In this document: positions 35,454-57,488 of the stretch, one piece after another
Numbering within the stretch: the first letter of the stretch is position 1
Layout: every line of letters begins with the position of its first letter
IMG/VR virus record: IMGVR_UViG_3300042502_001233
Coordinates: 298,019-362,018 of that record
Direction: 5' to 3' (one strand)
DNA: 64,000 nt
The notes under the pieces: generated by a model
Database searches by the model: none
Told to the model about the DNA's origin: nothing
The model's input: the letters and a program-made list of their open reading frames with translations, nothing else
Program-made: the position numbers and the translations under genes

Positions 35454-36437
35454 TTAAAAACGTGCTTTTTTAAGACCTTCATAACTTGATTGACTGTTGA
35501 TTGCAATAACCGCGTAAGCTATTTGCGTTGCAACTGAGATTGATTTGATTTTAGTTACACCAAAACCAATTGGACCAGCACCCTTATCCAAGGAATCACT
35601 TATAATCAATTCTTTAAGGACCGATTTTTCAATACGACCTAACGCTGGACCAGACAACACACCATGGCTAATAATCGCTCTTACACTGTTAGCACCAGCT
35701 TCCATGATAACTTCAGCTGCTTTGCATAGTGTACCAGCGGTATCAACCATATCATCTAAGATAATAACGTCTTTACCAGTTACATCACCAATGATAATCA
35801 TTTCATCAATGACATTGGCTTGGCTACGAGTCTTATCCAACATAACATAGTTAATGGCAATGTTGTGATATTTAGCTAATTGGTCTTTCATACGTTTAAC
35901 TCTTTTTCCAGAGCCAGCGTCAGGTCCGCACAATATTGTGTTCTCGTTATAGATACTAGCGATGTATTCACTAAACACGTTTTTACCTTCCAAGTGTGTT
36001 ACTGGAATATTGAAAAAACCTTGAATTTGGTCTGCATGTAAATCAAATGTGATTACACCAGTCGCTCCACGATTTTCAATCATTTCAACCATCACTTTGG
36101 CACCAATTGGTCCGCGTGATTGGTCTTTCTTGTCACTTCTCTGATAAGGAAAAAATGGTAAAATAGGGATGATTTCTTTAGCAGCAGCACGTTTGGCCGC
36201 ATCTATCGCTAAATTTAGCTTGATAATCTCGTCGGAGTTGTTAGGGCTTGTCAAAAGATAAACTCGTTTACCTCTAATAGAATTACAGAAATCCACACAT
36301 AATTCTCCGTCTGAGAACTTTTGTGAATTAACCTTATCAACAACGATAGGGTCTTTGGATATTTTTTTGATTGCTTTGATAACACCATTGGTCAAATCTT
36401 CTCGACCATCAATTGATATAAGGACTGATTCTAACAT
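35454..36437 (-). CDS. prs: ribose-phosphate pyrophosphokinase family protein
   Basis: FSDGE, PYQRSDKK, DLHADQIQGFF, PDAG, DDMVDTAGTL. Confidence 0.92.
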   Translation of the reverse strand: MLESVLISIDGREDLTNGVIKAIKKISKDPIVVDKVNSQKFSDGELCVDFCNSIRGKRVYLLTSPNNSDEIIKLNLAIDAAKRAAAKEIIPILPFFPYQRSDKKDQSRGPIGAKVMVEMIENRGATGVITFDLHADQIQGFFNIPVTHLEGKNVFSEYIASIYNENTILCGPDAGSGKRVKRMKDQLAKYHNIAINYVMLDKTRSQANVIDEMIIIGDVTGKDVIILDDMVDTAGTLCKAAEVIMEAGANSVRAIISHGVLSGPALGRIEKSVLKELIISDSLDKGAGPIGFGVTKIKSISVATQIAYAVIAINSQSSYEGLKKARF

Positions 36438-36671
36438 AAGTTATAATTTTTAGCAAAGATACTAAATAAAAAATGAATAACCAAACGGTTATTCATTTTT
36501 TTTAGTGTTTTTTGCGATTAAAAATATAACCCACGATATAACTCCTGCTATCGCTAAGTATTTAACCAAGTAGGCAAATACCATTATCCCAATCCAAACA
36601 GATTTAAGGATAATTATTACTAGCAAAACAGCTAGGAATATCAAAAGAAATTTTATTCTTCTCATTTTTTA

Positions 36672-37121
36672 TTAATTTATAATTATTGAACCAGTTCCAG
36701 CATTGGTGATGATTTTGTTATCACCAACATCTTTTACGTTAAGGATGAATTCTCCTTTTGGTGGGTAAATAAATTTACAACTCGACCCACCCAAAGATTC
36801 ATAAATTGTACTTGATTTAACTGAAAAAGAATACACAAATTCAGAACCACCTTCATAACTTCTTCCAGATATCGTGTAAAATGGTTTAGACACAATTTGT
36901 TTTTTACCATTAACCTCCATCGTTACTATAGCGTCTCTAAAAATTTCAATTTCTTTTTTGAAATTAGGGTCTTCGCTGGTTACTAACGATTCTGGTACCG
37001 TTAGCGTCATAGTGTCTGTGTTTTTATCGTATGATAATGTTACACCTTTTACAGTTACCGTTTGAGCAACCATAGATATTGTTGCGAAAAACAACAATAA
37101 ACTTACTTTAATTTTTTCCAT
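36672..37121 (-). CDS. secreted hypothetical protein
   Basis: Signal-peptide-like N-terminus ending VAQ. Confidence 0.65.
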   Translation of the reverse strand: MEKIKVSLLLFFATISMVAQTVTVKGVTLSYDKNTDTMTLTVPESLVTSEDPNFKKEIEIFRDAIVTMEVNGKKQIVSKPFYTISGRSYEGGSEFVYSFSVKSSTIYESLGGSSCKFIYPPKGEFILNVKDVGDNKIITNAGTGSIIIN

Positions 37122-37465
37122 TCTCTTATGTTGTATTTGGTTTTATATTTTCCTAATTCGTAACTACCGTTATACAACACAATGTCTATGGCTGTTGGTA
37201 ATTCATCGTACAATTTATCCCACTCTGCTTTTTGTTCGTCAGAGTATGTTTTAGGACCTTCAACAGCAAAAGGGTCCATGTCTTTATCAAAACCATTTAG
37301 AATTAAATCTATAGCTTCGTATAAATCATCCTCACCAAACGGTGGAAGGTTCTCTACCCCATCATGACCTAACGCCACAATTTGATTTTCGCTGTTAAAA
37401 GACCAACGCAACTGTTTAATCAATTTAACGTGTTCTTCTTTTAACTCAAATTTTAATACGCTCAT
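37103..37465 (-). CDS. hypothetical protein
   Basis: 120-aa ORF in operon. Confidence 0.7.
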   Translation of the reverse strand: MSVLKFELKEEHVKLIKQLRWSFNSENQIVALGHDGVENLPPFGEDDLYEAIDLILNGFDKDMDPFAVEGPKTYSDEQKAEWDKLYDELPTAIDIVLYNGSYELGKYKTKYNIREWKKLK

Positions 37466-38220
37466 TATTTGTCGTTTTTATCGTCTCCAACAGCCTGAAC
37501 CATTAGATTATTTACTAGTTCTGACACACCTTCCACAGCACCTTTCTCAATGTATGTGATGTCTAATTCTGGATACTCCAACCCCAATGATTTGGTAGGT
37601 GCTGGGTCCACGAAATAGATTGGTACATCACGTTTACATTTTTCAAAGAAATTGTATGTGTAACCTATGTTCATGCTAGTACCAACAACAATGATAATAT
37701 CTGCTTCAATAAACGCTTCTAACGCTTCATAGAAGAAGAAAGGATATTCACCAAACCAAACAATATGTGGTCTTAATTGTGCATTATATTCTTCATCTTT
37801 ATCACCCATGTTTATATCACAATAACCGATGTCATAAACCTTTTGTGTCGCAACAAGTGTTTGGTTGTTCATTCCAAAACAAGTTCTAGCTTTGGTCAAT
37901 TCACCATGCAAGTGAATTATATTGGTAGAACCACCTCTTTCATGCAAATCATCAACATTTTGTGTTACGATTGTAACCTCGTGCTTAGATTCTAACGCAG
38001 CCAACGCTGTATGGGCATTGTTTGGTTCTACTGTAGGTAATTGTTTACGTCTAGCATTGTAAAAATCCAACACTTTAGAACGGTCTTTAGCCCAACCTTC
38101 TGGTGTGGCAACCTCATCAATCTTAAAATTTTCCCACAAACCATCCTTGGAATCTCTAAAGGTTTCAATTCCAGATTCTTTGCTGATACCAGCACCAGTA
38201 AAAACTACTATTTTACCCAT
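37465..38220 (-). CDS. cobB: Sir2-family NAD-dependent deacylase
   Basis: GAGISKESGIETFR, TQNVDDLHERGG, HLHG, RPHIVWFGE, VGTS. Confidence 0.93.
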   Translation of the reverse strand: MGKIVVFTGAGISKESGIETFRDSKDGLWENFKIDEVATPEGWAKDRSKVLDFYNARRKQLPTVEPNNAHTALAALESKHEVTIVTQNVDDLHERGGSTNIIHLHGELTKARTCFGMNNQTLVATQKVYDIGYCDINMGDKDEEYNAQLRPHIVWFGEYPFFFYEALEAFIEADIIIVVGTSMNIGYTYNFFEKCKRDVPIYFVDPAPTKSLGLEYPELDITYIEKGAVEGVSELVNNLMVQAVGDDKNDK

Positions 38221-38513
38221 TATCGATTAAAGATTAATCTAAATAGCGCACCTAGGACTCTAATTGTGATGAAAAACCCACCAACAAAACCAAAATCGTA
38301 CCAAGCACCGTTATTATGTACAGCATACACAGCAACATCGTCCCAGATAAGACTACCAATAAAAGATGGCATCATAATCATACCATGCCATGTTCCACCC
38401 CAGAAACCATATATGTGTTCGTTAGGATTTGGAAATTGAACTTGTGCAACATCTGCACATGATGTAGCGAACATTAACAACGCTAACGCCACAAAGATAA
38501 ACATTTTTTTCAT
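38220..38513 (-). CDS. small membrane lipoprotein
   Basis: Lipobox-like ATSC; GFWGGTWHG...WYDFGF. Confidence 0.7.
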   Translation of the reverse strand: MKKMFIFVALALLMFATSCADVAQVQFPNPNEHIYGFWGGTWHGMIMMPSFIGSLIWDDVAVYAVHNNGAWYDFGFVGGFFITIRVLGALFRLIFNR

Positions 38514-38914
38514 TCTAATAATTTTTTTATTTGTTTTATTTTTTCGTTAACTCTTTGGTTAACTCTTTCTTCTACCACTCTACTCAACACAGATTCAATA
38601 ATAGTTTCAGTTATCTTATCTATTTTATCATCAATGTGTCGTTTCAATGATGTTTCAAATTCGGCTAACCGTTTATCAATTTCTCTCTTAAGATATTCTC
38701 TCTTTCGTTCTATATCTTCTTGTGTTTGTGATAGTAATTCTTGGTCGATAAACTTATGTAATTCTTCCCTTAATTCTTTAGGTGTAATCACCATATCATC
38801 CCCATAACTGTTTGTGAATTTAACAAAATCATTATCTGAAATTTGTATCGAACCACTTAATGAGTCAAGCCTTCTAAAATCGTTATATGCGTTTAAATCA
38901 CTTATTCTCGCCAT
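38510..38914 (-). CDS. coiled-coil hypothetical protein
   Basis: 134-aa charged helical ORF. Confidence 0.65.
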   Translation of the reverse strand: MARISDLNAYNDFRRLDSLSGSIQISDNDFVKFTNSYGDDMVITPKELREELHKFIDQELLSQTQEDIERKREYLKREIDKRLAEFETSLKRHIDDKIDKITETIIESVLSRVVEERVNQRVNEKIKQIKKLLE

Positions 38915-39335
38915 AATGGTTCAACATTAACTCGTAAACCTCTTGCCAATCCGTTTCTGGGCTGAAACCTGCTTTGTCCTCAAACAAAACATTCATATAA
39001 GGTTTTTTATCGTAATTCCCATAACCTTTAGGGTCAGTAGGAATCTCTGGGTTCTCATTCACGTATTTAAAATGAATATCGTTCTCAAGGAACAATCTTT
39101 GATATTCAATTACTTCATGTGGGTGAGAACACGTATACAAGAACATAACCACTTCTGGTATTGTACTTAACAATTTAAGTGTTTCTTTAGCCATTGGGTA
39201 AAACTCATCAGGTGTGTTACCATATTGATAGTTAGGTTTAAGGATTGTCCCGTGAATATCAAAGGCGAAATAACCTTTATCCCATCCTCTTTTTTCTTTA
39301 TTTCTAAAAAAATTTTTAATTGCTGTACTTACCAT
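38898..39335 (-). CDS. HAD-like hydrolase
   Basis: FDIHGT, LYTCS, KPY...EDKAGF. Confidence 0.75.
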   Translation of the reverse strand: MVSTAIKNFFRNKEKRGWDKGYFAFDIHGTILKPNYQYGNTPDEFYPMAKETLKLLSTIPEVVMFLYTCSHPHEVIEYQRLFLENDIHFKYVNENPEIPTDPKGYGNYDKKPYMNVLFEDKAGFSPETDWQEVYELMLNHYGENK

Positions 39336-40125
39336 AACTTTCTTTTATTTGTTTGTATTTAATTAATTTTCGTGATAACCCAAAATTATCACCTTTGTAA
39401 ATGTATTCACCTAATTTTATTATATTTTTACCCAAAATACGTAAAACAGAACTTTTGTTTTCTTTGTTTGTTTTTTTATTTAAATTAATAACACGTCTAA
39501 CTTTATATTTAATTTCTAATTCATCACATAAATCTTCAAAATAAGACCAATCCTGTTCATAAGATGAAGTTATCGCAAATTGTCTACCATTATTTTTATA
39601 ATAAAAAGACCCATCACCATCTATTAATCCTCTAAAAAAATAATGTTTTAATTCATCAGGTATTTTAGATAATATTTTATCAGCTGATTTATATGATTTT
39701 TTATCATAATCATTTTCAATTAAAAAATTATTTATATTTCTATTTGAACCTATTAAATATACAGCCGTTTTCCAACCATTTTTACTTCTATCTTGGATTG
39801 ATTTACCCCAATTACCTAATTTGAAAAATAATGATTCTATTTCATCAATATCTTTTTTCACACCACCAACATTAAAATGTCTACCATCAGCCCTTACATG
39901 ACCATCAGCCCATATAAAACCTAAAACATATGCTGTATATGAATTCGTGATTTCTTCAAATTCTGAAAATTTTAAACTTTTTTCTTTTTTTAAGTTTAAA
40001 ACTCTTATTTTATAAACCACTTGTTCAACTGGTATACCTAAAACATCAGAACAATGAAATCTATCAGTTAAAGGGTATTCTTTAATTAAAAAATTTATTT
40101 CGTTTTCACTCCATTTGTGTTTCAT
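39316..40125 (-). CDS. LAGLIDADG homing endonuclease
   Basis: YVLGFIWADG and FFRGLIDGDG. Confidence 0.92.
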   Translation of the reverse strand: MKHKWSENEINFLIKEYPLTDRFHCSDVLGIPVEQVVYKIRVLNLKKEKSLKFSEFEEITNSYTAYVLGFIWADGHVRADGRHFNVGGVKKDIDEIESLFFKLGNWGKSIQDRSKNGWKTAVYLIGSNRNINNFLIENDYDKKSYKSADKILSKIPDELKHYFFRGLIDGDGSFYYKNNGRQFAITSSYEQDWSYFEDLCDELEIKYKVRRVINLNKKTNKENKSSVLRILGKNIIKLGEYIYKGDNFGLSRKLIKYKQIKESYGKYSN

Positions 40126-40187
40126 ATTTTTGTTTTATTATAAATATAATAAAAAACACAAAAAGATAAAGTTATTCACGTAAAATT

Positions 40188-40268
40188 CTAAAACCAAAAC
40201 GTTCTATCCCAATTTCTTTTTTCTTTAAGTTCGAAATGATTTATTTCTATCGCTCTTGTTATACTCAT
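40188..40268 (-). pseudogene. orphaned original 5' end of the 38898-39335 HAD gene
   Basis: MSITRAIEINHFELKEKRNWDRTFWF* versus MVSTAIKNFFRNKEKRGWDKGYFAF. Confidence 0.7.
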
Positions 40269-40447
40269 GGTATATATAATTTTTTAAAGTCAACTGTTTT
40301 CATTGAATAATACATATCCCCTTGTTTAAAGAAAACTGTATCACCAAATTGATTTACGTTTGACGGTTTCCATTCCGTTAATAAACTAACTGGTAAGTTT
40401 AACTCACCTTCGTTGGCAACACCAACTTTGATTAATTCTTCTGCCAT
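40265..40447 (-). CDS. hypothetical protein
   Basis: 60-aa ORF in operon. Confidence 0.55.
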   Translation of the reverse strand: MAEELIKVGVANEGELNLPVSLLTEWKPSNVNQFGDTVFFKQGDMYYSMKTVDFKKLYIP

Positions 40448-40448
40448 T

Positions 40449-41015
40449 CTAACTATTTAAAAAGCTTATTATTTTTTCTTTAACACCAGACTGTTTGATA
40501 CCTTCATATAGTCTTGGTGTGTGAACAAAATTCGTTAAACCACCGTTTGTTTCACCGTCTATGTTTATGTATTCACCTAGTTGCATGTCATCAACAGCTA
40601 CCCACGTATCAACTGGGTTACTCTTTAACCAATGGTTAATTTCAAGTATTCTAGCACGTTCATACCATCCTTTGTAGTGGAATAAAGCCTCACTATATTC
40701 GTCAAAATCTTTAAGGTTTGGCGTAAGAGCTATTGGTTTTTTTATGATACCTTGCAACTCATAAAACTCACCTAATTCTTCCAAATTTGCCCATCTTTTC
40801 CAATCAGACGAAACAACAATTTCAGCACCAGTTTCTTCAAGTATTTGGTTCAATACATTGATTGCTTTTTTGTTGAAATTGTCGAATCGTTCTATAACTG
40901 GGATAGACCCGTCGGCTATTGTTTGTCCAACACTTCTGTTTTGTTTCTTGAATCTGCTTCCAAATTCACTACCCAAACAAATAACCCCATCATGGTCTAA
41001 GAATATTATTTTCAT
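40449..41015 (-). CDS. HAD domain protein, Swiss-Army-knife RNA-repair-like
   Basis: IFLDHDGV, IVVSSDWK, WVAVDD. Confidence 0.82.
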   Translation of the reverse strand: MKIIFLDHDGVICLGSEFGSRFKKQNRSVGQTIADGSIPVIERFDNFNKKAINVLNQILEETGAEIVVSSDWKRWANLEELGEFYELQGIIKKPIALTPNLKDFDEYSEALFHYKGWYERARILEINHWLKSNPVDTWVAVDDMQLGEYINIDGETNGGLTNFVHTPRLYEGIKQSGVKEKIISFLNS

Positions 41016-41052
41016 ATTGCAAAGATACGAATTATTTTCGAAAAATCAAATA

Positions 41053-41724
41053 TTATGGAACATATTTTACAACGGTTACGTCTTCACCGTTTAATTCTTC
41101 TTGGATAATGCCTTCGATGATATCCCACGACCCCCCAGCTAAACCGCTGCCAATCATTGGTAAACCAAATGTCTTGCCTGAAAACTTCTCTTTCATAGCT
41201 CTCAACGCCAAACGCAATGCAGAGTAATCCAAATCCATTCTACCATGTTGTCTACCTTTATAGTCAAATTGACCATACAAGTTAACAATGATAGGTGTTG
41301 TGGTTTCAGTGTAAGTTATTGTACCCAATTTTGATTGGTCCCCAGATGTAGTTTCGCAATCAGCAGCATACGCTTCTGGAAACTTGTGTTTAATCTGTGG
41401 GGCTATACCTGCACCCATAGTGCAGAAACAATTGCAACAATGTGCAATTACGTCATAATTATCGGCATCCCTAACTAGGTCGCCATCAATGTATTTTATC
41501 ATAGTTAATATTGGTGTTGTAAATTTACGATACAAGAATACAGTTTCAACGTTGTATCTTCTTCTACCATTTATAATTGTTGGATTTAAAACCGTGTCGA
41601 TTGTTTTCAATCGATGTTTTCCGATTTTAAGAATGTGTTTTACTATTCCGCTTCTAAGCGTTTTGAATTTCCCAGTCTTTTTGATTAGGAAATCATTTTT
41701 TTGGTAATTGTCTTTTAATGCCAT
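41053..41724 (-). CDS. macro domain (ADP-ribose processing) protein; true start may be internal MIKYIDGDL
   Basis: GDL...IAHCCNC..TMGAGIA...PMIGSGLAGGSW. Confidence 0.9.
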   Translation of the reverse strand: MALKDNYQKNDFLIKKTGKFKTLRSGIVKHILKIGKHRLKTIDTVLNPTIINGRRRYNVETVFLYRKFTTPILTMIKYIDGDLVRDADNYDVIAHCCNCFCTMGAGIAPQIKHKFPEAYAADCETTSGDQSKLGTITYTETTTPIIVNLYGQFDYKGRQHGRMDLDYSALRLALRAMKEKFSGKTFGLPMIGSGLAGGSWDIIEGIIQEELNGEDVTVVKYVP

Positions 41725-41725
41725 T

Positions 41726-42742
41726 TTACTCGTTGTCGTTTTCGTTAAACCTTTTGTTTGCTAGTTTGATAGAAGCAGCTACTGTGTCTTCTAACGTGTT
41801 ATATATGTTAGCTTCGTAGTTCAATGTTTCTTCAAATACTTCACCCCACATGATGTCTAAGTAACTCATACGATAAGCATCATCTGGTCTACCATAAACC
41901 ATTTTTTGTGGTTCTCTACCTTGCCAATACCCAAATTCCATGTTGGTTGTCAACGCAATCAACTCTTTGGTTCTTGGAATCCAGAACATAATACAATCAG
42001 CGGCTTTTAAGCCATTGTATTCCCATCTAGGAACCCATGCTTTGTTTTGGTCAGATTCTGTCTTAGACGTGAACTCTGGTACTATTATATCACCATTGAA
42101 ACCTTGACGTTTAAACTCTTCTATAGCTTCATAACGCCATGATGTTAAATGTGGTTGGTGACCTCTAACCGTTGGACCAGCCAAAAATATTGATGGTTTT
42201 TCAATCAACCTGATAACTTCTTGAGGTGTATGATAACGGTGAACCGTTACATTGTGTTTGGTTAGAGCTTCTTTATCAAACTCATCTCTAACACGCATAA
42301 TAGCTTCACCTAACCAATTGGTACCTTTCCATTTTGTTTTGTCGTTGATGTCTGGGTGAGATTCATGCATCCCTATACCCCAAATAGTGTCTTCTGGACT
42401 GGCTTCAACAATTTCCAACTTGCCAGTTCTCATTAACTCTGATTTCATCACAGAATTTTGACTAAACTTAGCGTAATTAGCTTCATATACGATTTCACGA
42501 CATACAGCTTCCCATTTGTCTTTGTTAAAGTTTTTAACTTTGCGACCAATAGCTTTTTGCTCTTTAGGTCCCTTAGCCATCATAATTTCAGCCCATGATG
42601 TATAGTCTTTGAACAGTATGGCTTTTTTAGCCATCATGTATTGCTCAGCCGTTACATATTTTACTCCGTCAATTTCAAACTCACTAGGAGCCCACTGGGA
42701 AAACGTCCCACCCCAAAAGAATATGTATTTATCAGTTTTCAT
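41726..42742 (-). CDS. NADAR domain fused to a nucleoside 2-deoxyribosyltransferase-like domain
   Basis: FSQW, TAEQYMMAKKA, KFSQN, EASPEDTIWGIG, GTNWLG; IFLAGP, SWR, TTNMEFG. Confidence 0.9.
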   Translation of the reverse strand: MKTDKYIFFWGGTFSQWAPSEFEIDGVKYVTAEQYMMAKKAILFKDYTSWAEIMMAKGPKEQKAIGRKVKNFNKDKWEAVCREIVYEANYAKFSQNSVMKSELMRTGKLEIVEASPEDTIWGIGMHESHPDINDKTKWKGTNWLGEAIMRVRDEFDKEALTKHNVTVHRYHTPQEVIRLIEKPSIFLAGPTVRGHQPHLTSWRYEAIEEFKRQGFNGDIIVPEFTSKTESDQNKAWVPRWEYNGLKAADCIMFWIPRTKELIALTTNMEFGYWQGREPQKMVYGRPDDAYRMSYLDIMWGEVFEETLNYEANIYNTLEDTVAASIKLANKRFNENDNE

Positions 42743-42744
42743 AA

Positions 42745-43356
42745 TTAAACTAAATCTTTTGCATGTTGCATGCTTATTTTGTCATAGACACCTGAACAAA
42801 GGCTATAAACGTATAACCAAAGTCTTCTAAATGGGTTATTCAATAACGTTGCTACCAAAGATAGCGGCCAATATGAAATCCAAGCTATAATTGAAGATTT
42901 GTTATCAGTACCGTTAGGCATAATCTTAACAACAACATCTTTCATATTGTTAACATCACTACCGTATAACTTGAAACCAAACTGTCTTAAAAAATCACAT
43001 AACCCACGCAAGTGTATTTGGTCTTTTTCATCAAACTTTTTGTTTTGTTCTAAGTATTCTGCTCGTTTTGTTTTGAACAAATTGACTTTTTTCTTAACAA
43101 ATTCATTCCATTTAAGTATAGACCAACCCATACCTAATATAATATAACCTAGTGAAAAATAAATGGTTGTAGCGATGTTTGTCGATACAAAAGCCCATAA
43201 ATCTTTTCCATAGTTCCACAATAAAAGTGCCAACACAAATGATATTATACCACTTGCCCAACCTTCTTCTTCATTTTCTAGCGATACCATTACCGCTATT
43301 GCCCCTACAATACTAACTCCTAGTATAACGTAGATGTTACTTAAAAATTCTAACAT
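42745..43356 (-). CDS. membrane protein
   Basis: Several hydrophobic segments; IIAWISYWP. Confidence 0.75.
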   Translation of the reverse strand: MLEFLSNIYVILGVSIVGAIAVMVSLENEEEGWASGIISFVLALLLWNYGKDLWAFVSTNIATTIYFSLGYIILGMGWSILKWNEFVKKKVNLFKTKRAEYLEQNKKFDEKDQIHLRGLCDFLRQFGFKLYGSDVNNMKDVVVKIMPNGTDNKSSIIAWISYWPLSLVATLLNNPFRRLWLYVYSLCSGVYDKISMQHAKDLV

Positions 43357-43368
43357 AATTTCTTTTTT

Positions 43369-44496
43369 TTAGTTTGTTACTTTTGCTCTTTCTCTAATTT
43401 CTTCGAATGTGTATTCCACAAGGATTTCACCCATTCTAAACACTTCAACCAACTCGTCTTTAACAGTGTCAAAATCAGCATCCATTGATGTAACGGTTCT
43501 GTATGTACCATCATCATTTTTAACCAATTTAAGTTTACCTTGTTTTGATTTTTTAAATGATTTGGTGATGTTACCATCAGCGTCCATTTCAGTTGGTGAT
43601 TTAACCACGTTTCTTTCTTCTCCGTCAACTACGGCAAAGCATGCTTTCGTGGCAAAGTTCAAAGTATCTCGATTACAGTCTTGAAGTAATTTACCACCCA
43701 TACCCAACGCTAAATTCTCTGGAGATATTTTTTCATCTTCTAACATTGCGTAGATTTCTTTAATTGACTCCAAGTTAACACCGTCACCTTGGATAACACG
43801 AACTTGTGGTGGCAACACTTTGTAACCTTTATCGTTCACAGTGTATCCAAATTTATCGAACAATATGTGGAAAATTTCTCGTAATGAGTTGATTACGTGA
43901 CCAGAATCTGGACGGATTACAAGCTGATTTCCTGGCTCTGCTGGACGTGATAAGATAAGGTCTATAAGGTCTTGACCCCAATATTGTGCACACGCTCTGA
44001 AAATGTTGTAAGAGTCAGATACACATGCTACCAAACCAGTAGGGAACATAGTCAATACTCTTCTCATCATTTCTAACTCACCTTCTTCACCGTTAAGGGT
44101 CATGATAGAGTGTTCAGTAGCTGGAATAGACAATCCGTAGATAGTTTCTGTGTTGTAAAGGTCTCTAATCATTTTAGAAGCAATTACAGTATCAGAACCT
44201 TTGAAGTTAACCAAATGCGCTGAACCACCAATTTTAGCTGATTGTACACTTGATACACCACGGAAACCGAAGTCATTCAATACAAAATCCACAAGGAACT
44301 CTCGTAACGCTGGGTCGTAAGATGTACATTTTTGGAATGCGGCATCTACAATTTTTCTTACTTCTCTAGAAAGAGTAGCAACAGTGATTGGGTACCATAC
44401 TTGAAGCAAAATTGATTCTAAGAAGTTTGTCAACCAAGCACATTCTGGGTCGAGACTTTCAATCGTGAATAGCACGTTCTTGGTGTTTACAACGGA
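43369..44496 (-). CDS. nadV: nicotinamide phosphoribosyltransferase (NAMPT) family, exon 2
   Basis: SVVNTKNVLFTIE, DFGFRG, PATEHS, VSDSY, IRPDSG, IQGDG, SKQG. Confidence 0.93.
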   Translation of the reverse strand, partial: SVVNTKNVLFTIESLDPECAWLTNFLESILLQVWYPITVATLSREVRKIVDAAFQKCTSYDPALREFLVDFVLNDFGFRGVSSVQSAKIGGSAHLVNFKGSDTVIASKMIRDLYNTETIYGLSIPATEHSIMTLNGEEGELEMMRRVLTMFPTGLVACVSDSYNIFRACAQYWGQDLIDLILSRPAEPGNQLVIRPDSGHVINSLREIFHILFDKFGYTVNDKGYKVLPPQVRVIQGDGVNLESIKEIYAMLEDEKISPENLALGMGGKLLQDCNRDTLNFATKACFAVVDGEERNVVKSPTEMDADGNITKSFKKSKQGKLKLVKNDDGTYRTVTSMDADFDTVKDELVEVFRMGEILVEYTFEEIRERAKVTN

Positions 44497-45466
44497 CGTT
44501 TATATTCCACTCAACTCGCAACAGTTGAATGCGTTCTCTAAGGAACTGCTTTATCTCTCGATAAAGACTAGACTATATCAAAACCCTATTTACTAGGGTC
44601 AAAACCATTTCCAGAACCATTAGCTTGTTCTGTACTCCCTTGCGGGATAGTCGTTGAACGTTTTTCTAAATTTAAGTATATTTTATTAACAAGGTTTAAA
44701 AAATCATCATGGTCTAAACACATTTTAGCTCTATTACATGTTTCACAACAAGTAACAACATTTTCGTTGGTGTATCCAATTTCATTATTCAATCTATCAA
44801 TTCCGTTTCTTTTAAACTCTAAACCACTTCGATTATATCTTTCCTCACCTTTATTTACTTTTGGTTCCTCACCGCAATAATAACAATTTGAAAAAATTAA
44901 TTCTTTTACCTTTTCATCGGTAAGTAAGAATTCATAACCTCTATTTTTTGCACCACTTTTATATTGTTTTAAAACTCTACTAAGTAATGCGCCATTTTCT
45001 GGTTTTATTCTAGTTTTGGAAATTTCTTTGATTGAACATTGTTTACATTGTGTTCTTTTTCCATTATTTAATTCATTTGGTCTTACTTTTGCTTCTCCAC
45101 CACATTCACACTCACAAACCCAAAGGTATTGTTCATATTTTTTAGTTTCATCTAAAATGTAATCTTTAGCAATTAACTTACCAAACTTCTCACCAGTTAA
45201 ATCTTTAAACAATGGTGATTCTTTTCCTTTTTTATACTCTCTCATAATTAATGCGTTTATTAATAAATATCACGAACTTTTAAAAACGCACTAATAAAAT
45301 GAAAATAAATTTAGAAACTTCGCTGCTGATTTCCCAATCCTATATCTTTTCAAACATTCACGCTTAATATTACTATTTACGTTGTAGTGTTATAGGCTCT
45401 AAGGGGTTCCCAGCAATTAGATTTCTTTAGACATACTATTACTAGTATGAATGGCTACTTTTGTTA
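44497..45466 (-). mobile_element. group I intron in NAMPT, carrying an HNH-type endonuclease ORF
   Basis: 5' splice site after GGU with P1 partner GUAGCC; core P AATTGCTGGGAA, Q AATCAGCAG, R TTCAACGACTA, S GATATAGTCT; terminal G at 44497; splicing restores AVPEG|SVV in frame. Confidence 0.93.
44586..45245 (-). CDS. intron-encoded HNH/His-Cys-type endonuclease
   Basis: DLTGEKFGKL, WVCECECG, CYYCG, NGIDRLNN..GY...NVVTCCETCN. Confidence 0.88.
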   Translation of the reverse strand: MREYKKGKESPLFKDLTGEKFGKLIAKDYILDETKKYEQYLWVCECECGGEAKVRPNELNNGKRTQCKQCSIKEISKTRIKPENGALLSRVLKQYKSGAKNRGYEFLLTDEKVKELIFSNCYYCGEEPKVNKGEERYNRSGLEFKRNGIDRLNNEIGYTNENVVTCCETCNRAKMCLDHDDFLNLVNKIYLNLEKRSTTIPQGSTEQANGSGNGFDPSK

Positions 45467-45901
45467 ACCCTCTGGAACCGCTTTGATACTTATTGGTAGT
45501 TTACCATCGTATTTATCAACGATATAGTCAAATTTGCTTCTATCGAAGACATCATCACGACCAAAGACACCTAACTTGGTACCTAAGTATTCGTAAGCTT
45601 CATCAACTTCTTCTTTAACGATTGCAATACCTTCAAGGTATTGTTTAAGGATAATTTGTAGACCGTAGAACAATGTGGTATCAAATTTACCACCTCTAGA
45701 TTCCAAATAAGAAATCATTTTGGTCATTTCAACACCGTAGAATCTGTGGTGTGAATATTTGTAAGCGTCGCTACACAAGATAAGGTTATCTGGTTTAACA
45801 AGCACTTTTGATAATACTTTTTGGATTGATTTAATATCATCCAAATCAGCGTTGGCTAACGCTCTCTCTAGTCGTCTGACTAAATTTCTTTGTATGCTCA
45901 T
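45467..45901 (-). CDS. nadV: NAMPT family, exon 1 (spliced product about 520 aa)
   Basis: SDAYKYSH, YLESRGG, FYGLQ, LPISIKAVPEG. Confidence 0.93.
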
Positions 45902-45959
45902 AATTTTTAAACATTTAGTTGTGCAAATATACTACTATTTTATTATATCTGCAATTATT

Positions 45960-47465
45960 TTAGTAATTTTTTAGTTTGCCATTTTCGTCTCTGTGCATGA
46001 TGTGCTCAGACGTTAATTGAGTAACATCTGTCAAGCCCATAGCGCCCAATACTTCTCTCACTTCATGTATCACAGCTTTATGGTAGTTATACACACGTAC
46101 TTTCTTTTCTGCTGGGTTTAACGCGCCAATAAGTGTTTTGTTTTGCGTGGCAATTCCAACTGGACAAGTGTTCATGTTGCACTCTCTAGCTTGAATACAC
46201 CCAAGACTTAACATAAATGCTCTAGCTGCGTTCACAGTATCAGCACCCATAGCCAATAGTTTGATAATATCGAATGAAGTACTAGCTTTACCTGATGCAA
46301 TTACTTTAATATCATCTTTTAACCCAGCTTTATTCAAGTTATGGTTAACAATTTTCAAAGCATCCATAAGGGGCATACCAATACTGTTAGTGAACACCAA
46401 AGGAGCCGCACCAGTACCACCCTCACCACCATCAACAGTTATAAAGTCTGGGTAGTTTTTGTTTTCTTTCATCGTTTGACATAACTCTTGGAACTCCAAA
46501 TCATCACCAATACATAATTTAATGCCGATTGGTAATCCACCAGACAACTTTCTAAGTTTAGCCACGAACTTTAATAACCCAACAGAATCAGAAAATGCTG
46601 AATGATATGGTGGACTCATCACATCTATATTGGCCTCAACACCACGTATAGCGGCTATTTCAGGTGTGTTTTTAGAAGCTGGTAAAATTCCACCATGACC
46701 AGGTTTTGCCCCTTGAGACAACTTGATTTCAATCATCTTGATGTTCCCACTTTTCAAAGTTTTTACAAATTCCATATCAGAAAAATGACGTTTACCAGCT
46801 ATGGTTTTACCCGCACCAAAATAACCAGTACCTATTTGGAAACACAAATCACCACCATTCTCTGTATGATATGGACTTACACCACCTTCACCAGTGTTGT
46901 GATAAAAGTTACCCAACTTAGCACCACCATTTAACGAACGCACAGCAGCATTTGACAACGCACCGTAGCTCATAGCACTAATGTTAAGAATACTTGCAGA
47001 ATAAGGTTTCTTGCAGAATTTTGAACCAATGGTAACACGAGGTTCTTTAACTAGTGACAAATCTTTTGGGTACATCGAATGTTTCAGAAATTCATATCCT
47101 TTTGCATATACATCATCTTGTGTACCAAATGGTGTCGTGTTAACCTCACCTTTGGATTTTTGGTACACGTCAGAACGTTTTTCACGATTATAAGGTGTTC
47201 CGTTAGTGTTATCCTCGATAAAATATTGTTGAATTTTTGAACGCTCGTGTTCAAACACCCATCTAAGTCTACCGATTAGAGGATAATTTCTTAACAACGC
47301 ATGTTTGGTTTGGTTGATGTCTTTAATAACTGTAACTAAACAAACCACACTGGTCAAAGCCAATAGTGTTAACAATAGACTAGGAAACAACGAAGCAAAT
47401 AACGTAAGAATTATTGCCAAGCATGTAAATATCAATAAAATTTTGTCTCTAGTTAAATTACTCAT
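45960..47465 (-). CDS. FMN-binding glutamate synthase family protein
   Basis: SAMSYGALS, NTGEGG, EIKLSQGAKPGHGG, VDGGEGGTGAAP, GCIQARECNMNTCPVGIATQ. Confidence 0.93.
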   Translation of the reverse strand: MSNLTRDKILLIFTCLAIILTLFASLFPSLLLTLLALTSVVCLVTVIKDINQTKHALLRNYPLIGRLRWVFEHERSKIQQYFIEDNTNGTPYNREKRSDVYQKSKGEVNTTPFGTQDDVYAKGYEFLKHSMYPKDLSLVKEPRVTIGSKFCKKPYSASILNISAMSYGALSNAAVRSLNGGAKLGNFYHNTGEGGVSPYHTENGGDLCFQIGTGYFGAGKTIAGKRHFSDMEFVKTLKSGNIKMIEIKLSQGAKPGHGGILPASKNTPEIAAIRGVEANIDVMSPPYHSAFSDSVGLLKFVAKLRKLSGGLPIGIKLCIGDDLEFQELCQTMKENKNYPDFITVDGGEGGTGAAPLVFTNSIGMPLMDALKIVNHNLNKAGLKDDIKVIASGKASTSFDIIKLLAMGADTVNAARAFMLSLGCIQARECNMNTCPVGIATQNKTLIGALNPAEKKVRVYNYHKAVIHEVREVLGAMGLTDVTQLTSEHIMHRDENGKLKNY

Positions 47466-47467
47466 GA

Positions 47468-48466
47468 TTATTTTAATGTAATTAAGTTTTCTTCTACTAC
47501 TTTTTTGATGAATGTTTCCATCAATTTAATGTGTTCTGGGACAATTTTATCCTCTATATCGAACATATAGTTTTTATTCTGGGTGTGACCACTACCTTGA
47601 CTTGGGTCTGTTATCACACTAAACAAATCTTTGATGTTAAACCATTTTACTTCCGCGATATCGTCAGAAGCTTCTGGTCTACCCATTTGGTCCCAAGCGT
47701 GTGTCATGAACAAAGTTGTCATAATACCGTTTTCTTCTCTAGCATAACGCCAATCTTCTACAGCTTGACTGCACACATAATGCATTTTCAACGCAGATAG
47801 TTTTGTTTCTTCGTAAAGTTCTCTACGAGCAGCCATTTCCCAATTTTCATCAGTACGGTCAACAAACCCACCAACAAATCTAAAAAGCGTTTCAGATGGT
47901 TTTCTAGCCAATAGGATTTTATCACCATCAACAACCACAACATCAACTGTTGGGTATGTTACTGGTCTTTGTCTGTGAATACCATAGATAACACCACTTC
48001 TAAATTCATCTGAATCCAACGGTGTATTAGCAGCTTCTGCTCTAAGGTCAGTAGCGTTGTGTGAATCGACTTGTGGGTATTCTTCTGTAGAATGATTTCC
48101 ATGATAATGAGGAATGAATGAATCGCGACTACCATATAATACCGCATCGGTTTCTGGGAACATACTTCTAATAGCGTTGTCAATCTGTGTTGACCATTTA
48201 TGGTCACTTCTGTTGTCGTCTAACGGCAATAAAATGACATTTGGATAAACGTTTTGAACCATTTTACATCTGGTTGCAAAATCCAAAGGATTTCTTTTTG
48301 AGTTTTGTATTCTAGGGATACCTAAAAACACAACAACATTTCTATGGTTTTCAGTTACATAGTCCAACAGACCTGTGTGACCTTCATGTAATTCAGGTGT
48401 TTGGAATCTTCCAATAACTACACCTACAGTGTTTAAATTTTTCATTTTCTTGATTTTATGTTGCAA
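47468..48466 (-). CDS. nadM: bifunctional NMN adenylyltransferase / Nudix ADP-ribose pyrophosphatase
   Basis: IGRFQ..LHEGH, NPL, NATDLR; GGFVD...AARRELYEET, ASDDIAEVKW. Confidence 0.9.
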   Translation of the reverse strand: MQHKIKKMKNLNTVGVVIGRFQTPELHEGHTGLLDYVTENHRNVVVFLGIPRIQNSKRNPLDFATRCKMVQNVYPNVILLPLDDNRSDHKWSTQIDNAIRSMFPETDAVLYGSRDSFIPHYHGNHSTEEYPQVDSHNATDLRAEAANTPLDSDEFRSGVIYGIHRQRPVTYPTVDVVVVDGDKILLARKPSETLFRFVGGFVDRTDENWEMAARRELYEETKLSALKMHYVCSQAVEDWRYAREENGIMTTLFMTHAWDQMGRPEASDDIAEVKWFNIKDLFSVITDPSQGSGHTQNKNYMFDIEDKIVPEHIKLMETFIKKVVEENLITLK

Positions 48467-51807: not shown

Positions 51808-52314
51808 TTAGATGCAATCTTTATTGTTGTTTTTTTTATATAATTCAAACCTAAACTTATATCCGTTTTCTTCGTGTATCTCACTACCTTCAATCAAACA
51901 CCAATCTTTATGGTCTAAACCTTCCAAATATATATCACCTTCAACCTCACTATAAATCTGTGTTAAATACAATCTATGAGCGTATTTAAAAGCTTCCTTG
52001 TACAAACCAGCACCACCGATGATAAAAACTTCTTTATCACTATTTTCATGTACCTTTAAAAGGTTTTCTAAATCAAAAGTAACAGAAGCACCATTAGCTA
52101 CGTAGTTTTTATCTCGACTCATAACGATATTCGTTCTGTTAAGTAATGGTCTATATTTCTCTGGTATACTTTCCCAACACTTTCTACCCATCACCACAAC
52201 GTGACCTTTGGTTGTGTCTTTGAAATATTTCATGTCGGTTGGCAAATGCCAAGGCAAGTCGTTATCTTTACCGATAACTAAATTAGTTGATGTTGCTACT
52301 ATTATGTTTATCAT
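51808..52314 (-). CDS. folA: dihydrofolate reductase
   Basis: VIGKDNDLPWHLPTDMKYFK, VMGRKCWESI, RPL..R, IIGGA. Confidence 0.97.
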   Translation of the reverse strand: MINIIVATSTNLVIGKDNDLPWHLPTDMKYFKDTTKGHVVVMGRKCWESIPEKYRPLLNRTNIVMSRDKNYVANGASVTFDLENLLKVHENSDKEVFIIGGAGLYKEAFKYAHRLYLTQIYSEVEGDIYLEGLDHKDWCLIEGSEIHEENGYKFRFELYKKNNNKDCI

Positions 52315-56308: not shown

Positions 56309-56333
56309 ATATTAGTCACAAAAAAGTGACCAG

Positions 56334-56407
56334 TGCAGTAGACGAGACTCGAACTCGCAACCCTTGACTTGGCAAGCCAATACTCTAACCAATTGAGCTA
56401 CTACTGC
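56334..56407 (-). tRNA. tRNA-Gly(GCC)
   Basis: Full cloverleaf; TTGGC-TTGCCAA-GTCAA. Confidence 0.93.
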
Positions 56408-57359: not shown

Positions 57360-57488
57360 TTGTTCTCGGTATAGGGATTTGACCCTTAGTACCTCGAACC
57401 TTTTAAAATTGCAATCATAGTTTTCCTTTTTTATTAATTAGTATTTTATTAGAGTACAAATATACGAACTCTTTTTATAAATAGCAAG

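What the first reader, a model, noticed from the sequence alone, without database searches (positions are those of the whole stretch)
35454..48466. Complete NAD+ rebuilding loop from NADase products
Seen: Prs-like, NAMPT and NMNAT-Nudix genes within 13 kb. Known chemistry: Nudix converts ADP-ribose to ribose-5-P, Prs makes PRPP, NAMPT makes NMN from nicotinamide, and NMNAT makes NAD+. Phage NARP1 (Prs-like plus NAMPT-like) and NARP2 (NAMPT plus NMNAT) counter NAD-depleting defences such as Thoeris and DSR. Inference: either a NARP2 extended to recycle ADP-ribose itself, or NARP1/NARP2 hybrid chemistry.
Basis: partly seen in the sequence, partly recalled or inferred. Interest (0 to 1): 0.62.

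Follow-up and report, generated by a model that had tools for sequence, protein, structure and literature searches.

The report
Phage NAD salvage island with Prs
A 362-kb lake-water jumbo phage keeps a true PRPP synthetase, an intron-split NAMPT, an NMNAT-Nudix enzyme and several ADP-ribose-handling genes in one 13-kb island; this is the known NARP2 way of rebuilding NAD+ with its own PRPP supply added, not new chemistry.

Summary
Prs (35454-36437), NAMPT (43369-45901) and NMNAT-Nudix (47468-48466) are all on the minus strand. Each is the only copy in a 362-kb virus genome. Three single-copy genes would fall this close by chance about 0.4% of the time.

New detail: NAMPT is split by a 970-nt group I intron that carries an HNH endonuclease. 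A near-identical relative has the intron-less allele. One RNA run holds the intron alone, as a 969-nt circle.

The NARP1/NARP2 hybrid reading is rejected.
- The Prs is a canonical class I PRPP synthetase. It has all catalytic motifs and the C-terminal module that Adps lacks, and a 100/100 branch separates it from Adps.
- The NAMPT groups with KVP40 NadV and lacks the aromatic clamp residues of Namat.
- The third protein belongs to the NadM-Nudix family (NMNAT/ADP-ribose pyrophosphatase) by sequence profile and by predicted fold.

Best reading: a NARP2-type salvage pair made self-sufficient in PRPP. Its Nudix domain, and a Macro protein like the one inside a NARP1 operon, could feed ADP-ribose back in through ribose-5-phosphate. 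Gene content, and the persistence of the island in relatives despite gene turnover, support this. The flux itself is inferred. It is a new variant of a known kind, of moderate interest.

The parts
35454..36437 (-). Canonical class I ribose-phosphate diphosphokinase (Prs, PRPP synthetase), 327 aa
   Evidence: Pfam PF13793, PF14572 and PF00156. TIGR01251 scores 261 bits against a cut-off of 113. Best solved structure is B. subtilis Prs 1dkr, E = 6e-60. It falls on the canonical side of a 100/100 branch away from six Adps. The motifs FSDGE, DLHADQIQGFF, DKTR and DDMVDTAGT and the C-terminal helices are present.
37465..38220 (-). Sirtuin (Sir2/CobB-like NAD+-dependent deacylase or ADP-ribosyltransferase), 251 aa
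   Evidence: Pfam SIR2, E = 3.9e-41. NCBIfam Sir2/CobB models score 176-182 bits, below their equivalog cut-offs. It is present in relatives L003, L005 and L023 and absent in L022.
39316..40125 (-). LAGLIDADG homing endonuclease ORF, an insertion relative to close relatives
   Evidence: Pfam LAGLIDADG_3, E = 1.8e-9. No such gene lies at this position in L022 or L023.
40449..41015 (-). HAD phosphatase of the 'Swiss Army Knife' RNA-repair type
   Evidence: Pfam HAD_SAK_2, E = 3.3e-20. It is conserved in L022 and L023. The sirtuin plus SAK-HAD association in phages is described in PMC9503650.
41053..41724 (-). Macro-domain protein, homologue of the Macro gene embedded in a NARP1 operon (Adpp-like candidate ADPR-1''-phosphate phosphatase)
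   Evidence: Pfam Macro, E = 3.6e-8. It is the only Macro in the genome. It is 41% identical (E = 2e-30) to the gene between Adps and Namat of Vibrio phage phi 3, which is itself a Macro protein. The family is widespread in phages, with 2551 records.
41726..42742 (-). NADAR domain fused to a nucleoside 2-deoxyribosyltransferase-like domain
   Evidence: Pfam NADAR, E = 3.3e-50, and Nuc_deoxyri_tr2, E = 8.4e-9. TIGR02464 scores 159 bits. The two domains occur apart or together in relatives.
42745..43356 (-). Small membrane protein of unknown function, conserved next to NAMPT
   Evidence: It has hydrophobic segments in the translation and no family hit. An ORF of the same size lies in the same place in L022 and L023.
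43369..44496 (-). NAMPT exon 2 (375 codons plus stop; catalytic domain)
   Evidence: NF006629 positions 107-463, 415 bits. Human and rat NAMPT structures match at E = 4e-87. It is 58.8% identical to the huge-phage LR756504 NAMPT from residue 156, and 40.5% to KVP40 NadV from residue 108. It lies outside the Namat clade. It carries the Nampt-type GMGGKLLQD motif.
44497..45466 (-). Group I intron, 970 nt, splitting NAMPT between codons ...AVPEG and SVVNTKN...
   Evidence: The exon ends in U and the intron ends in G. Rfam Intron_gpI scores 33.9 bits, E = 1e-6, below the gathering score. An intron-less allele exists in relative L022, with the exons contiguous. One RNA-run contig joins 44497 to 45465, giving a 969-nt circle, with no exon cover in that run. 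DNA runs span both borders.
44586..45245 (-). HNH homing endonuclease ORF inside the intron, 219 aa
   Evidence: PHROGs endonuclease VII and HNH families, E = 4e-20 to 4e-10. A CxxC...CETCNRAK motif is in the translation.
45467..45901 (-). NAMPT exon 1 (145 codons; N-terminal domain)
   Evidence: NF006629 positions 5-106. It is 47.9% identical to LR756504 NAMPT, ending at residue 155, and 33.9% to KVP40 NadV, ending at residue 107. These ends abut the exon 2 matches.
45960..47465 (-). Membrane-anchored FMN-binding glutamate-synthase-like protein of unknown role, between NAMPT and NMNAT-Nudix
   Evidence: Pfam Glu_synthase, E = 5.4e-84. The N-terminus is hydrophobic. It lies in the same place in L022 and is absent in L005.
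47468..48466 (-). Bifunctional NMN adenylyltransferase / Nudix (ADP-ribose pyrophosphatase-type) protein of the NadM-Nudix family. The start is uncertain: TTG at 48466 or ATG at 48445.
   Evidence: NUDIX, E = 5.5e-16. GRFQ..HEGH, NATDLR and RELYEET motifs are in the translation. The family profile hits 2qjt at 2.9e-24 and 2qjo at 9.8e-18 over both domains. The top six Foldseek hits are NadM-Nudix structures, E = 1e-16 to 6e-15.
34587..35411 (-). Thg1-like 3'-5' nucleotidyltransferase (tRNA repair type), conserved flank of the island
   Evidence: Pfam Thg1, E = 2.1e-30. It lies in the same relative position in L003, L005, L022 and L023.

Best explanation
The region is a NAD+/ADP-ribose metabolic island that recurs, with gene turnover, in a clade of roughly 340-376-kb freshwater jumbo phages.

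Core (shown by homology): a NARP2-type salvage pair. NAMPT makes NMN from nicotinamide and PRPP. The NMNAT domain of a NadM-Nudix protein adenylates NMN to NAD+.

Addition (shown by homology): a canonical class I PRPP synthetase.

Inferred working:
- The phage makes its own PRPP from ribose-5-phosphate and ATP, so NAD+ rebuilding does not depend on the host PRPP pool or compete with it.
- The Nudix domain splits ADP-ribose, the product of host NADases, into AMP and ribose-5-phosphate. That closes an ADPR to R5P to PRPP to NMN to NAD+ loop.
- The Adpp-like Macro protein may first convert ADPR-1''-phosphate or acyl-ADPR to ADPR.

NAMPT must first be spliced. It is interrupted by a mobile group I intron with an HNH endonuclease.
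For: Identity of parts
- Prs is canonical.
- NAMPT is Nampt-type.
- The third protein is NadM-Nudix by profile and fold.

Coupling of Prs to NAMPT
- Prs is the only PF00156 match in the 362-kb genome. No apt, hpt, upp, pyrE or purF type gene was found.
- NAMPT is the only NAPRTase-family gene. It is therefore the only phage-encoded PRPP consumer detected.
- The three genes lie within 13 kb, P about 0.004 by chance.
- The grouping Nudix, NAMPT, NDT/NADAR, Macro, Sir2, Prs, Thg1 persists through much gene turnover in relatives with 71-98% Prs identity.
- Of six other distinct phage genomes with a canonical Prs, five carry a NAPRTase-family gene and three carry a full NadM-Nudix.

Other support
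- The Macro is homologous to a NARP1-operon Macro. Such a Macro (Adpp) converts ADPR-1P to ADPR (bioRxiv 10.64898/2026.01.28.702374).
- NARP2 is known to be costly because it draws on PRPP (PMC13464706).
- Intron.
Against: - No enzyme activity, flux or defence phenotype was tested here.
- Prs and NAMPT are 7 kb apart with about ten unrelated or unknown genes between them, so this is an island and not an operon.
- In the huge phages the same three genes are 50-400 kb apart.
- Microcystis phage MaAM05 has a canonical Prs with neither partner.
- In relative L023 NAMPT is not within 10 kb of Prs.
- The substrate of this divergent Nudix domain is unknown. PMC9503650 instead reads the NadM Nudix domain as a regulator that cleaves NAD+.
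- The one RNA run that holds this locus covers only the intron, not the exons. Expression of NAMPT itself is not shown.
Confidence: 0.6

Rival explanations
1. NARP1/NARP2 hybrid. The Prs-like enzyme pyrophosphorylates ADP-ribose as Adps does, and the NAMPT joins ADPR-PP to nicotinamide as Namat does. NMNAT-Nudix would be a second route.
For: Adps and Namat are homologues of Prs and Nampt and are routinely annotated as such. KVP40 Nampt can use ADPR-PP weakly in vitro.
Against: - The window Prs sits with bacterial Prs, split from six Adps by a 100/100 branch.
- It keeps the C-terminal alpha11-alpha12 module, whose loss defines Adps, and the DDMVDTAGT loop where Adps has DDICDGG (PMC13586617).
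- tblastn identity to Adps genes is only about 25%.
- The NAMPT is outside the Namat clade and lacks the clamp aromatics. It has GMGGKLLQD where Namat has GVGS[YF]xYx[YFH] (PMC12774641).
- The two genes are not adjacent, whereas 97% of Adps have a Namat next door.
Confidence: 0.04
2. Prs is a general nucleotide-supply gene for replicating a very large genome. Its place near the NAD genes reflects a shared 'metabolic' neighbourhood, not a coupled pathway.
For: PRPP feeds all purine and pyrimidine synthesis and salvage (established biochemistry). Other nucleotide genes are nearby, such as DHFR at 51808-52314. MaAM05 has Prs without NAMPT or NadM-Nudix. The three genes are unlinked in huge phages.
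Against: The phage encodes no other PRPP-using phosphoribosyltransferase. Linkage to the NAD/ADPR genes persists through heavy gene turnover among relatives. Five of six other phages with a canonical Prs also carry a NAPRTase-family gene.
Confidence: 0.2
3. The island mainly serves the phage's own NAD+-consuming reactions, not counter-defence. A sirtuin acts with the SAK-type HAD phosphatase, Macro, NADAR, Thg1 and a calcineurin-like phosphoesterase in RNA-end repair or ADP-ribosyl processing. The salvage genes replace the NAD+ so spent and clear ADPR by-products.
For: Sir2, HAD_SAK_2, Macro, NADAR, Thg1 and Metallophos genes are interleaved with the salvage genes. Sirtuin plus SAK-HAD neighbourhoods in phages were predicted to act like KptA in RNA repair, with Nudix, HAD and calcineurin enzymes processing the ADPR products (PMC9503650).
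Against: The closest relative (L022, 98% Prs identity) lacks Sir2 but keeps the salvage genes. No RNA ligase, KptA or NAD+-dependent DNA ligase was found in the genome. KVP40 NARP2 genes alone counter Thoeris and DSR2. This rival is not exclusive of the best explanation.
Confidence: 0.25

Closest known systems
NARP2 of Vibrio phage KVP40 (NadV Nampt plus NatV NMNAT-Nudix; bioRxiv 10.1101/2024.02.11.579819)
   Same: It has a Nampt-clade enzyme, 40.5% identical to NadV over exon 2, plus an NMNAT-Nudix fusion in the same phage. The chemistry is the same: nicotinamide plus PRPP gives NMN, then NAD+.
   Different: - A phage-encoded canonical Prs is added, together with Macro, NADAR and Sir2 in one island.
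- The NMNAT-Nudix is so diverged that tblastn at E <= 1e-3 does not list KVP40.
- NAMPT is split by a group I intron.
NARP1 and NARP1-AP (Adps + Namat, with or without the Macro phosphatase Adpp; bioRxiv 10.64898/2026.01.28.702374)
   Same: The proposed net result is the same: NAD+ rebuilt from ADPR (or ADPR-1''P) plus nicotinamide. The enzymes are homologous folds. [quoted passage not shown]
   Different: Neither Adps nor Namat is present. ADPR would have to be broken to R5P and rebuilt through PRPP and NMN. By stoichiometry that means four activities instead of two, and one more ATP.
NadM-Nudix of Synechocystis (2qjo) and Francisella tularensis (2qjt)
   Same: The two-domain architecture is the same, with HxGH and Nudix-box motifs and a conserved C-terminal E-H helix. 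These are the best sequence-profile and fold matches.
   Different: Identity is about 20%. The interdomain linker is long and of low confidence (residues 137-170). The substrate is untested.
[quoted passage not shown]
   Same: They are freshwater jumbo phages with a roughly 10-kb conserved cluster holding NAMPT and an NMNAT-Nudix fusion. The window phage is also from lake water and has about 32% GC.
   Different: I could not see the gene list of those islands because the supplement is not held. Whether they include Prs, Macro or Sir2 is unknown. No sequence comparison was possible.
Huge uncultured phages LR756504, LR756502 and LR745206 (595-735 kb records in GenBank)
   Same: They hold the closest NAMPT (58.6% identity by tblastn; 58.8% by BLASTP), NMNAT-Nudix (35-42%) and canonical Prs (42-45%) among deposited phages.
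   Different: There NAMPT and NMNAT-Nudix are adjacent but Prs lies 50-400 kb away. Those records carry no annotation.

Membership tests
NARP2 (Nampt + Nmnat NAD+ reconstitution pathway 2) | A phosphoribosyltransferase of the Nampt clade, distinct from NARP1 Namat | tested here: met
   The tree places exon 2 with LR756504 NAMPT and KVP40 NadV, with the Namat clade split off at 100/100. It carries the Nampt-type SCH-equivalent motif. NF006629 scores 415 bits.
NARP2 (Nampt + Nmnat NAD+ reconstitution pathway 2) | An Nmnat homologue encoded in the same phage genome | tested here: met
   It lies 1.6 kb upstream. NadM-type NMNAT is found by profile (2qjt, 2qjo and archaeal NMNAT 1f9a) and by fold. 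HEGH and NATDLR motifs are present.
NARP2 (Nampt + Nmnat NAD+ reconstitution pathway 2) | Makes NAD+ from PRPP, nicotinamide and ATP, and rescues phage from NAD+-depleting defence | not testable with these tools
   Needs enzyme assays and infection assays.
NARP1 (Adps + Namat) | Adps: membership of the phage Adps clade, loss of the C-terminal alpha11-alpha12 module and a remodelled PP loop (PMC13586617) | tested here: not met
   The window Prs is on the canonical side of a 100/100 branch. The C-terminal module is present. It has DDMVDTAGT, not DDICDGG, and DLHA, not DPHS.
NARP1 (Adps + Namat) | Namat: the Namat clade, aromatic selectivity-clamp helix, and adjacency to Adps | tested here: not met
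   It is outside the Namat clade. It has GMGGKLLQD without the two aromatics. It lies 7 kb from Prs.
Class I ribose-phosphate diphosphokinase (Prs) | Family model above cut-off, with catalytic flexible-loop Lys/Arg, the R5P-binding loop and the ATP-site His | tested here: met
   TIGR01251 scores 261 bits against 113. 1dkr matches at 6e-60. DKTR, DDMVDTAGT and DLHADQIQGFF are aligned with bacterial Prs.
Class I ribose-phosphate diphosphokinase (Prs) | Forms PRPP from ribose-5-phosphate and ATP | not testable with these tools
   Needs an enzyme assay with R5P against ADPR.
NadM-Nudix bifunctional NMNAT / ADP-ribose pyrophosphatase | N-terminal HIGH-type NMNAT fused to a C-terminal Nudix domain with an intact REx2EE box | tested here: met
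   Both domains align to 2qjt and 2qjo. The top six fold matches are NadM-Nudix. RELYEET is present. R215, E216, E219 and E220 are invariant in 19 relatives.
NadM-Nudix bifunctional NMNAT / ADP-ribose pyrophosphatase | Nudix domain hydrolyses ADP-ribose to AMP plus ribose-5-phosphate | not testable with these tools
   Inferred from family only. Identity to solved members is about 20%.
Group I self-splicing intron with homing endonuclease | 5' exon ends in U, the intron ends in G, and the reading frame is restored exactly | tested here: met
   The borders read GGT|TAAC...AACG|TCC. The exons abut at residues 155/156 of LR756504 NAMPT and 107/108 of KVP40 NadV.
Group I self-splicing intron with homing endonuclease | Match to the group I catalytic core model | tested here: inconclusive
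   RF00028 scores 33.9 bits, E = 1e-6, with P7, P8 and P9 aligned, but this is below the gathering score of 50. There was no hit in the wider 22-kb search.
Group I self-splicing intron with homing endonuclease | Intron-less allele at the same site, and excised intron RNA | tested here: met
   The uninterrupted 521-aa gene in L022 aligns on both sides of the insertion. One contig of an RNA run joins the intron's last G (44497) to its second base (45465), with cover of the intron only. This is a single contig in a single run.
Adpp (NARP1-AP Macro ADPR-1''-phosphate phosphatase) | Homology to the Macro gene embedded in NARP1 operons | tested here: met
   It is 41% identical, E = 2e-30, to Vibrio phage phi 3 SBVP3_0029, which lies between Adps and Namat and is a Pfam Macro protein. 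It was not compared with the assayed phage Gary protein.
Adpp (NARP1-AP Macro ADPR-1''-phosphate phosphatase) | Dephosphorylates ADPR-1''-phosphate to ADPR | not testable with these tools
   Needs an enzyme assay.

The most novel reading that the evidence does not exclude
The island is a self-contained, phage-encoded five-step cycle: an Adpp-like Macro, then the Nudix ADPRase, then Prs, then NAMPT, then NMNAT. It would rebuild NAD+ from nicotinamide plus either ADP-ribose or ADPR-1''-phosphate. That would give NARP2 the substrate economy and breadth of NARP1-AP by convergent means. It would also remove NARP2's known weakness, the drain on the host's PRPP.
Probability: 0.3. Interest if true: 0.65.

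Novelty: new variant of a known kind. Interest (0 to 1): 0.45.

Why it matters
NARP2 is considered costly and somewhat toxic because it consumes PRPP. A phage that brings a true PRPP synthetase, and can in principle regenerate its substrate from the NADase product ADP-ribose, would show how large phages escape that cost.

It would also be a second, convergent way to rebuild NAD+ from its cleavage products, beside NARP1.

It gives a practical rule for annotation. 'Prs' genes in phages are of two kinds, Adps in about 1300 records and canonical Prs in a handful. They can be told apart by the C-terminal module and the PP-loop motif.

The intron shows that counter-defence or metabolic genes of jumbo phages are targets of homing elements.

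Tried and rejected
- Near-identity DNA search of the whole 13 kb against deposited phages found only 36-56-bp matches. No close relative is deposited.
- Rfam over 22 kb at E <= 0.1 gave nothing. The group I match appeared only when the intron was searched alone, and it is below the gathering score.
- The Lee et al. 2017 KVP40 paper (PMC5388814) is not held. What it showed is cited second-hand.
- The supplement listing the genes of the Flavobacterium jumbophage islands is not held.
- tblastn with the NMNAT-Nudix did not list KVP40 NatV at E <= 1e-3. I therefore did not align it with NatV and relied on NadM-Nudix structures.
- Cluster look-up of relatives gave no organism names.
- An exact search of the CRISPR repeat in 185,579 species genomes found nothing, so there is no host clue.
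- No NAD+-dependent DNA ligase or KptA/Tpt1 was found in the genome. These would have supported the 'own NAD+ consumers' rival.
- Literature searches found no paper describing a canonical Prs as a partner of NARP2. The library is partial, so this is weak evidence of novelty.
- I did not build or search a joined (spliced) NAMPT. All searches, trees and alignments used the two exons separately, by reference.
- Complex prediction, the large representative search and the protein atlas were not used, because the family scans settled the identities.

Full report
**Context.** The window is the last 64 kb of a 362,018-bp IMG/VR virus record that CheckV rates complete. GC is about 32%, and the ORFs of 120 aa or more lie almost all on the minus strand. 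No close relative is among deposited phages. Public lake-water metagenomes from at least seven studies hold 88% or more of the sampled words of the NAMPT locus. Metagenomic contigs of 300-376 kb carry Prs proteins 71-98% identical to this one. It therefore belongs to a widespread clade of freshwater jumbo phages.

**The observation.**
- ORF 35454-36437 (-) has the three Prs Pfam domains and passes TIGR01251 at 261 bits against a cut-off of 113.
- ORF 47468-48466 (-) has a clear NUDIX domain and a sub-threshold cytidylyltransferase-like N-terminus.
- NAMPT is present, but not as one ORF. A 145-codon ORF (45901-45467) ends in ...ISIKAVPEG. After 970 nt, a frame opening at 44496 reads SVVNTKNVLFTIESLDPEC....
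- The two pieces match positions 5-106 and 107-463 of NCBIfam NF006629.
- They also match residues up to 155 and from 156 of the huge-phage LR756504 NAMPT, and up to 107 and from 108 of KVP40 NadV.
- Each of the three genes is the only one of its kind in the genome. The chance that three single-copy genes fall within 13 kb of 362 kb is 0.0037.

**The intron.**
- The intervening 970 nt (45466-44497, minus strand) follow an exon-terminal U and end in G.
- They hold a 219-aa HNH endonuclease ORF.
- They match the Rfam group I model over P7, P8 and P9 at 33.9 bits, E = 1e-6, which is below the gathering score.
- A relative with 98% identical Prs (L022) has an uninterrupted 521-aa NAMPT. Its DNA aligns to window 45901-45468 (nt 1-434, 96%) and 44493-43369 (nt 439-1566, 92%). 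This is an empty site.
- DNA runs hold contigs that cross both intron borders.
- In one freshwater-sediment RNA run, contigs tile only the intron. One contig joins 44497, the terminal G, to 45465, the second intron base. That is what a circularised excised group I intron lacking its first nucleotide would give. It is one contig in one run, and the tool warns that gaps in cover prove nothing.
- A 5' piece of the intron is about 90% identical to non-coding stretches of two Bacillus jumbo phages.
- I never joined the exons. Every search, alignment and tree used them separately, by reference.

**Is the Prs an Adps?** No.
- PMC13586617 defines Adps by loss of the C-terminal alpha11-alpha12 module, a remodelled PP loop and degenerate allosteric sites.
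- I aligned six Adps from NARP1 operons (Felixounavirus HK3, Pseudomonas Psxphi15, Vibrio phi 3, Mycobacterium DirkDirk, Bacillus MrBubbles, Staphylococcus SaGU1) with four bacterial-type Prs and one huge-phage Prs.
- The window protein shares FSDGE, DLHADQIQGFF, the DKTR catalytic loop, DDMVDTAGT and the C-terminal IAYAVIAINSQSSYEGL helices with the canonical enzymes. Adps have FPxGE, DPHS and DDICDGG, and stop short.
- In the tree the Adps clade is split from everything else at 100/100, and the window clade lies on the canonical side.
- The best solved structure is B. subtilis Prs at 6e-60. tblastn identity to Adps genes is about 25%.
- Adps-type genes occur in about 1300 phage records. Canonical Prs occur in a handful.

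**Is the NAMPT a Namat?** No.
- Exon 2 is 58.8% identical to LR756504 NAMPT and 40.5% to KVP40 NadV. It is 30-36% identical to five Namat.
- The Namat clade is split off at 100/100.
- At the selectivity-clamp helix, which PMC12774641 shows to carry two extra aromatic residues in Namat, the window has GMGGKLLQD. KVP40 has the similar GMGGGLLQQ, whereas Namat has GVGS[YF]xYx[YFH].
- The motifs SDAYKYSH, NDFGFRGVSS, SIPATEHS and IRPDSG are present and align with the same blocks in KVP40 NadV. I equate them with the catalytic residues of human NAMPT from my own knowledge.

**The third enzyme.**
- A profile of 19 relatives hits Francisella and Synechocystis NadM-Nudix over both domains (2.9e-24 and 9.8e-18), and archaeal NMNATs over the N-terminal domain.
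- The AlphaFold model has mean pLDDT 75.5 with a disordered linker at 137-170. Its six best Foldseek matches are those same bifunctional NMNAT/ADP-ribose pyrophosphatases.
- The GRFQ..HEGH and NATDLR motifs and the RELYEET Nudix glutamates are present. The Nudix residues R215, E216, E219 and E220, H27 and H30 of the HEGH motif, and R142 of NATDLR are invariant in the family.

**Surroundings.** Between Prs and NAMPT lie the following:
- a CobB-like sirtuin;
- a LAGLIDADG endonuclease, which is an insertion relative to the relatives;
- a SAK-type HAD phosphatase;
- a Macro protein;
- a NADAR domain fused to a nucleoside-deoxyribosyltransferase-like domain;
- a small membrane protein.

A membrane-anchored Glu_synthase-like FMN protein lies between NAMPT and NMNAT-Nudix. 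Thg1-like and calcineurin-like genes lie downstream of Prs.

The Macro protein is 41% identical (E = 2e-30) to the Macro gene that sits between Adps and Namat in Vibrio phage phi 3. That arrangement is the one bioRxiv 10.64898/2026.01.28.702374 names NARP1-AP, whose Macro (Adpp) dephosphorylates ADPR-1''-phosphate to ADPR. The same Macro family is common in phages outside NARP operons.

**Conservation.**
- Relatives with 71-75% identical Prs keep the order Nudix(-NMNAT), NAMPT, NDT-like, Macro, Sir2, Prs, Thg1, with many different small genes between.
- The 98% relative keeps AAA, NMNAT-Nudix, Glu_synthase, NAMPT, membrane protein, NADAR, Macro, HAD, then Prs and Thg1. It lacks Sir2.
- In the 88% relative NAMPT is not within 10 kb of Prs.

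This is a variable island, not an operon.

Outside the clade there are six distinct phage genomes with a canonical Prs. Five carry a NAPRTase-family gene and three carry a full NadM-Nudix. In the three where I have coordinates for the partner genes (LR756504, LR756502, LR745206), Prs lies 50-450 kb from them. Microcystis phage MaAM05 has Prs alone.

**Mechanism.**
- Shown by homology: the three enzymes are a canonical Prs, a Nampt and a NadM-Nudix.
- Shown by search: Prs is the only PF00156 match in the genome, and NAMPT is the only NAPRTase-family gene. The only phage-encoded consumer of PRPP found is therefore NAMPT.
- Established chemistry: ADPR gives AMP plus R5P (NadM-Nudix). R5P plus ATP gives PRPP (Prs). 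PRPP plus nicotinamide gives NMN (Nampt). NMN plus ATP gives NAD+ (NMNAT).
- Prior work: KVP40 enzymes were reported to make NAD+ from R5P, nicotinamide and ATP, and NARP2 counters Thoeris and DSR2. NARP2 is costly because it draws on PRPP.
- Inferred: here Prs removes that dependence, and the Nudix domain (with Macro upstream of it) lets the NADase product re-enter.
- Rivals: Prs may be a general nucleotide-supply gene. The island may mainly service a sirtuin-centred RNA-repair or ADP-ribosyl system as predicted in PMC9503650. Neither is excluded, and the second is compatible with the main reading.

**Novelty.**
- NARP2, NadM-Nudix, phage NAD gene neighbourhoods with NADAR and 'NAD-salvage islands' of freshwater Flavobacterium jumbophages are all published.
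- I found no paper that describes a canonical Prs as part of such a system, in a partial library.
- I rate it a new variant of a known kind. It is moderately interesting, and clear bench tests are available.

Noticed in passing
window 25843-26706, 26804-27502, 27505-29401, 29495-31777: The phage carries a CRISPR array with a 66-nt period (repeat about 33 nt, GTTGTGATTCCC[C/A]TACAGAATGGGTATAAGTAC). Next to it are Cas6 and an HD-helicase Cas3, with two unassigned ORFs between them that could be Cas5 and Cas7. The repeat has no exact match in 185,579 species genomes.
   Followed up: partly
window 44497-45466 (RNA run X14): In a freshwater-sediment metatranscriptome only the intron is covered. One contig joins its last G to its second base, giving a 969-nt circle. 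This fits a stable circular group I intron RNA.
   Followed up: partly
window 44489-45369 (RNA run X21): A wastewater metatranscriptome contig holds a 95.6%-identical copy of the intron, with flanks that differ from the window's. The same intron therefore sits in a diverged context elsewhere.
   Followed up: no
window 45402-45457; L028 2501-2556: The 5' part of the intron is 89-90% identical to non-coding stretches of Bacillus jumbo phages Goe21 and BpSp. In Goe21 the stretch lies between ORFs beside an RNA polymerase beta-subunit fragment. This suggests related introns in distant phages.
   Followed up: partly
L005 1828-3471; LR745206 84610-85344: Relatives with 75% identical Prs carry, in NAMPT's place, a 547-aa NAMPT-like protein so diverged that Pfam finds only the N-terminal domain. 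It still hits NAMPT structures at about 1e-21 to 1e-27. A similar weak NAPRTase match lies beside the NMNAT-Nudix of huge phage LR745206. This may be a distinct subfamily.
   Followed up: partly
window 45960-47465: A 501-aa Glu_synthase-domain FMN protein with a hydrophobic N-terminus sits between NAMPT and NMNAT-Nudix. It is also there in the closest relative. Its role is unknown.
   Followed up: no
window 39316-40125 and 33436-34341: There are more homing-endonuclease-like genes: a LAGLIDADG ORF that is absent at this site in relatives, and a DUF723/DUF4379 zinc-finger ORF. The island is heavily colonised by mobile endonucleases.
   Followed up: partly
window 56333-59687 and 7573-7648: A cluster of 12 tRNA genes includes duplicated Thr, Tyr, Gln and Lys. 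One further odd tRNA-like gene was called with a two-base anticodon.
   Followed up: no
window 12696-14687, 23246-23701, 51808-52314, 52495-53328: Other auxiliary genes are present: an RNase R/II-like exoribonuclease (RNB, E = 2e-109), a second stand-alone Nudix hydrolase, dihydrofolate reductase and a bestrophin-type channel.
   Followed up: no
window 35454-36437: The Prs of this phage clade has an unusual N-terminal 30 residues and a 6-residue insertion (AKYHNI). Its regulatory loop reads YQRSDKKDQS where bacterial Prs have YARQDRK. Allosteric control may differ from bacterial Prs.
   Followed up: no
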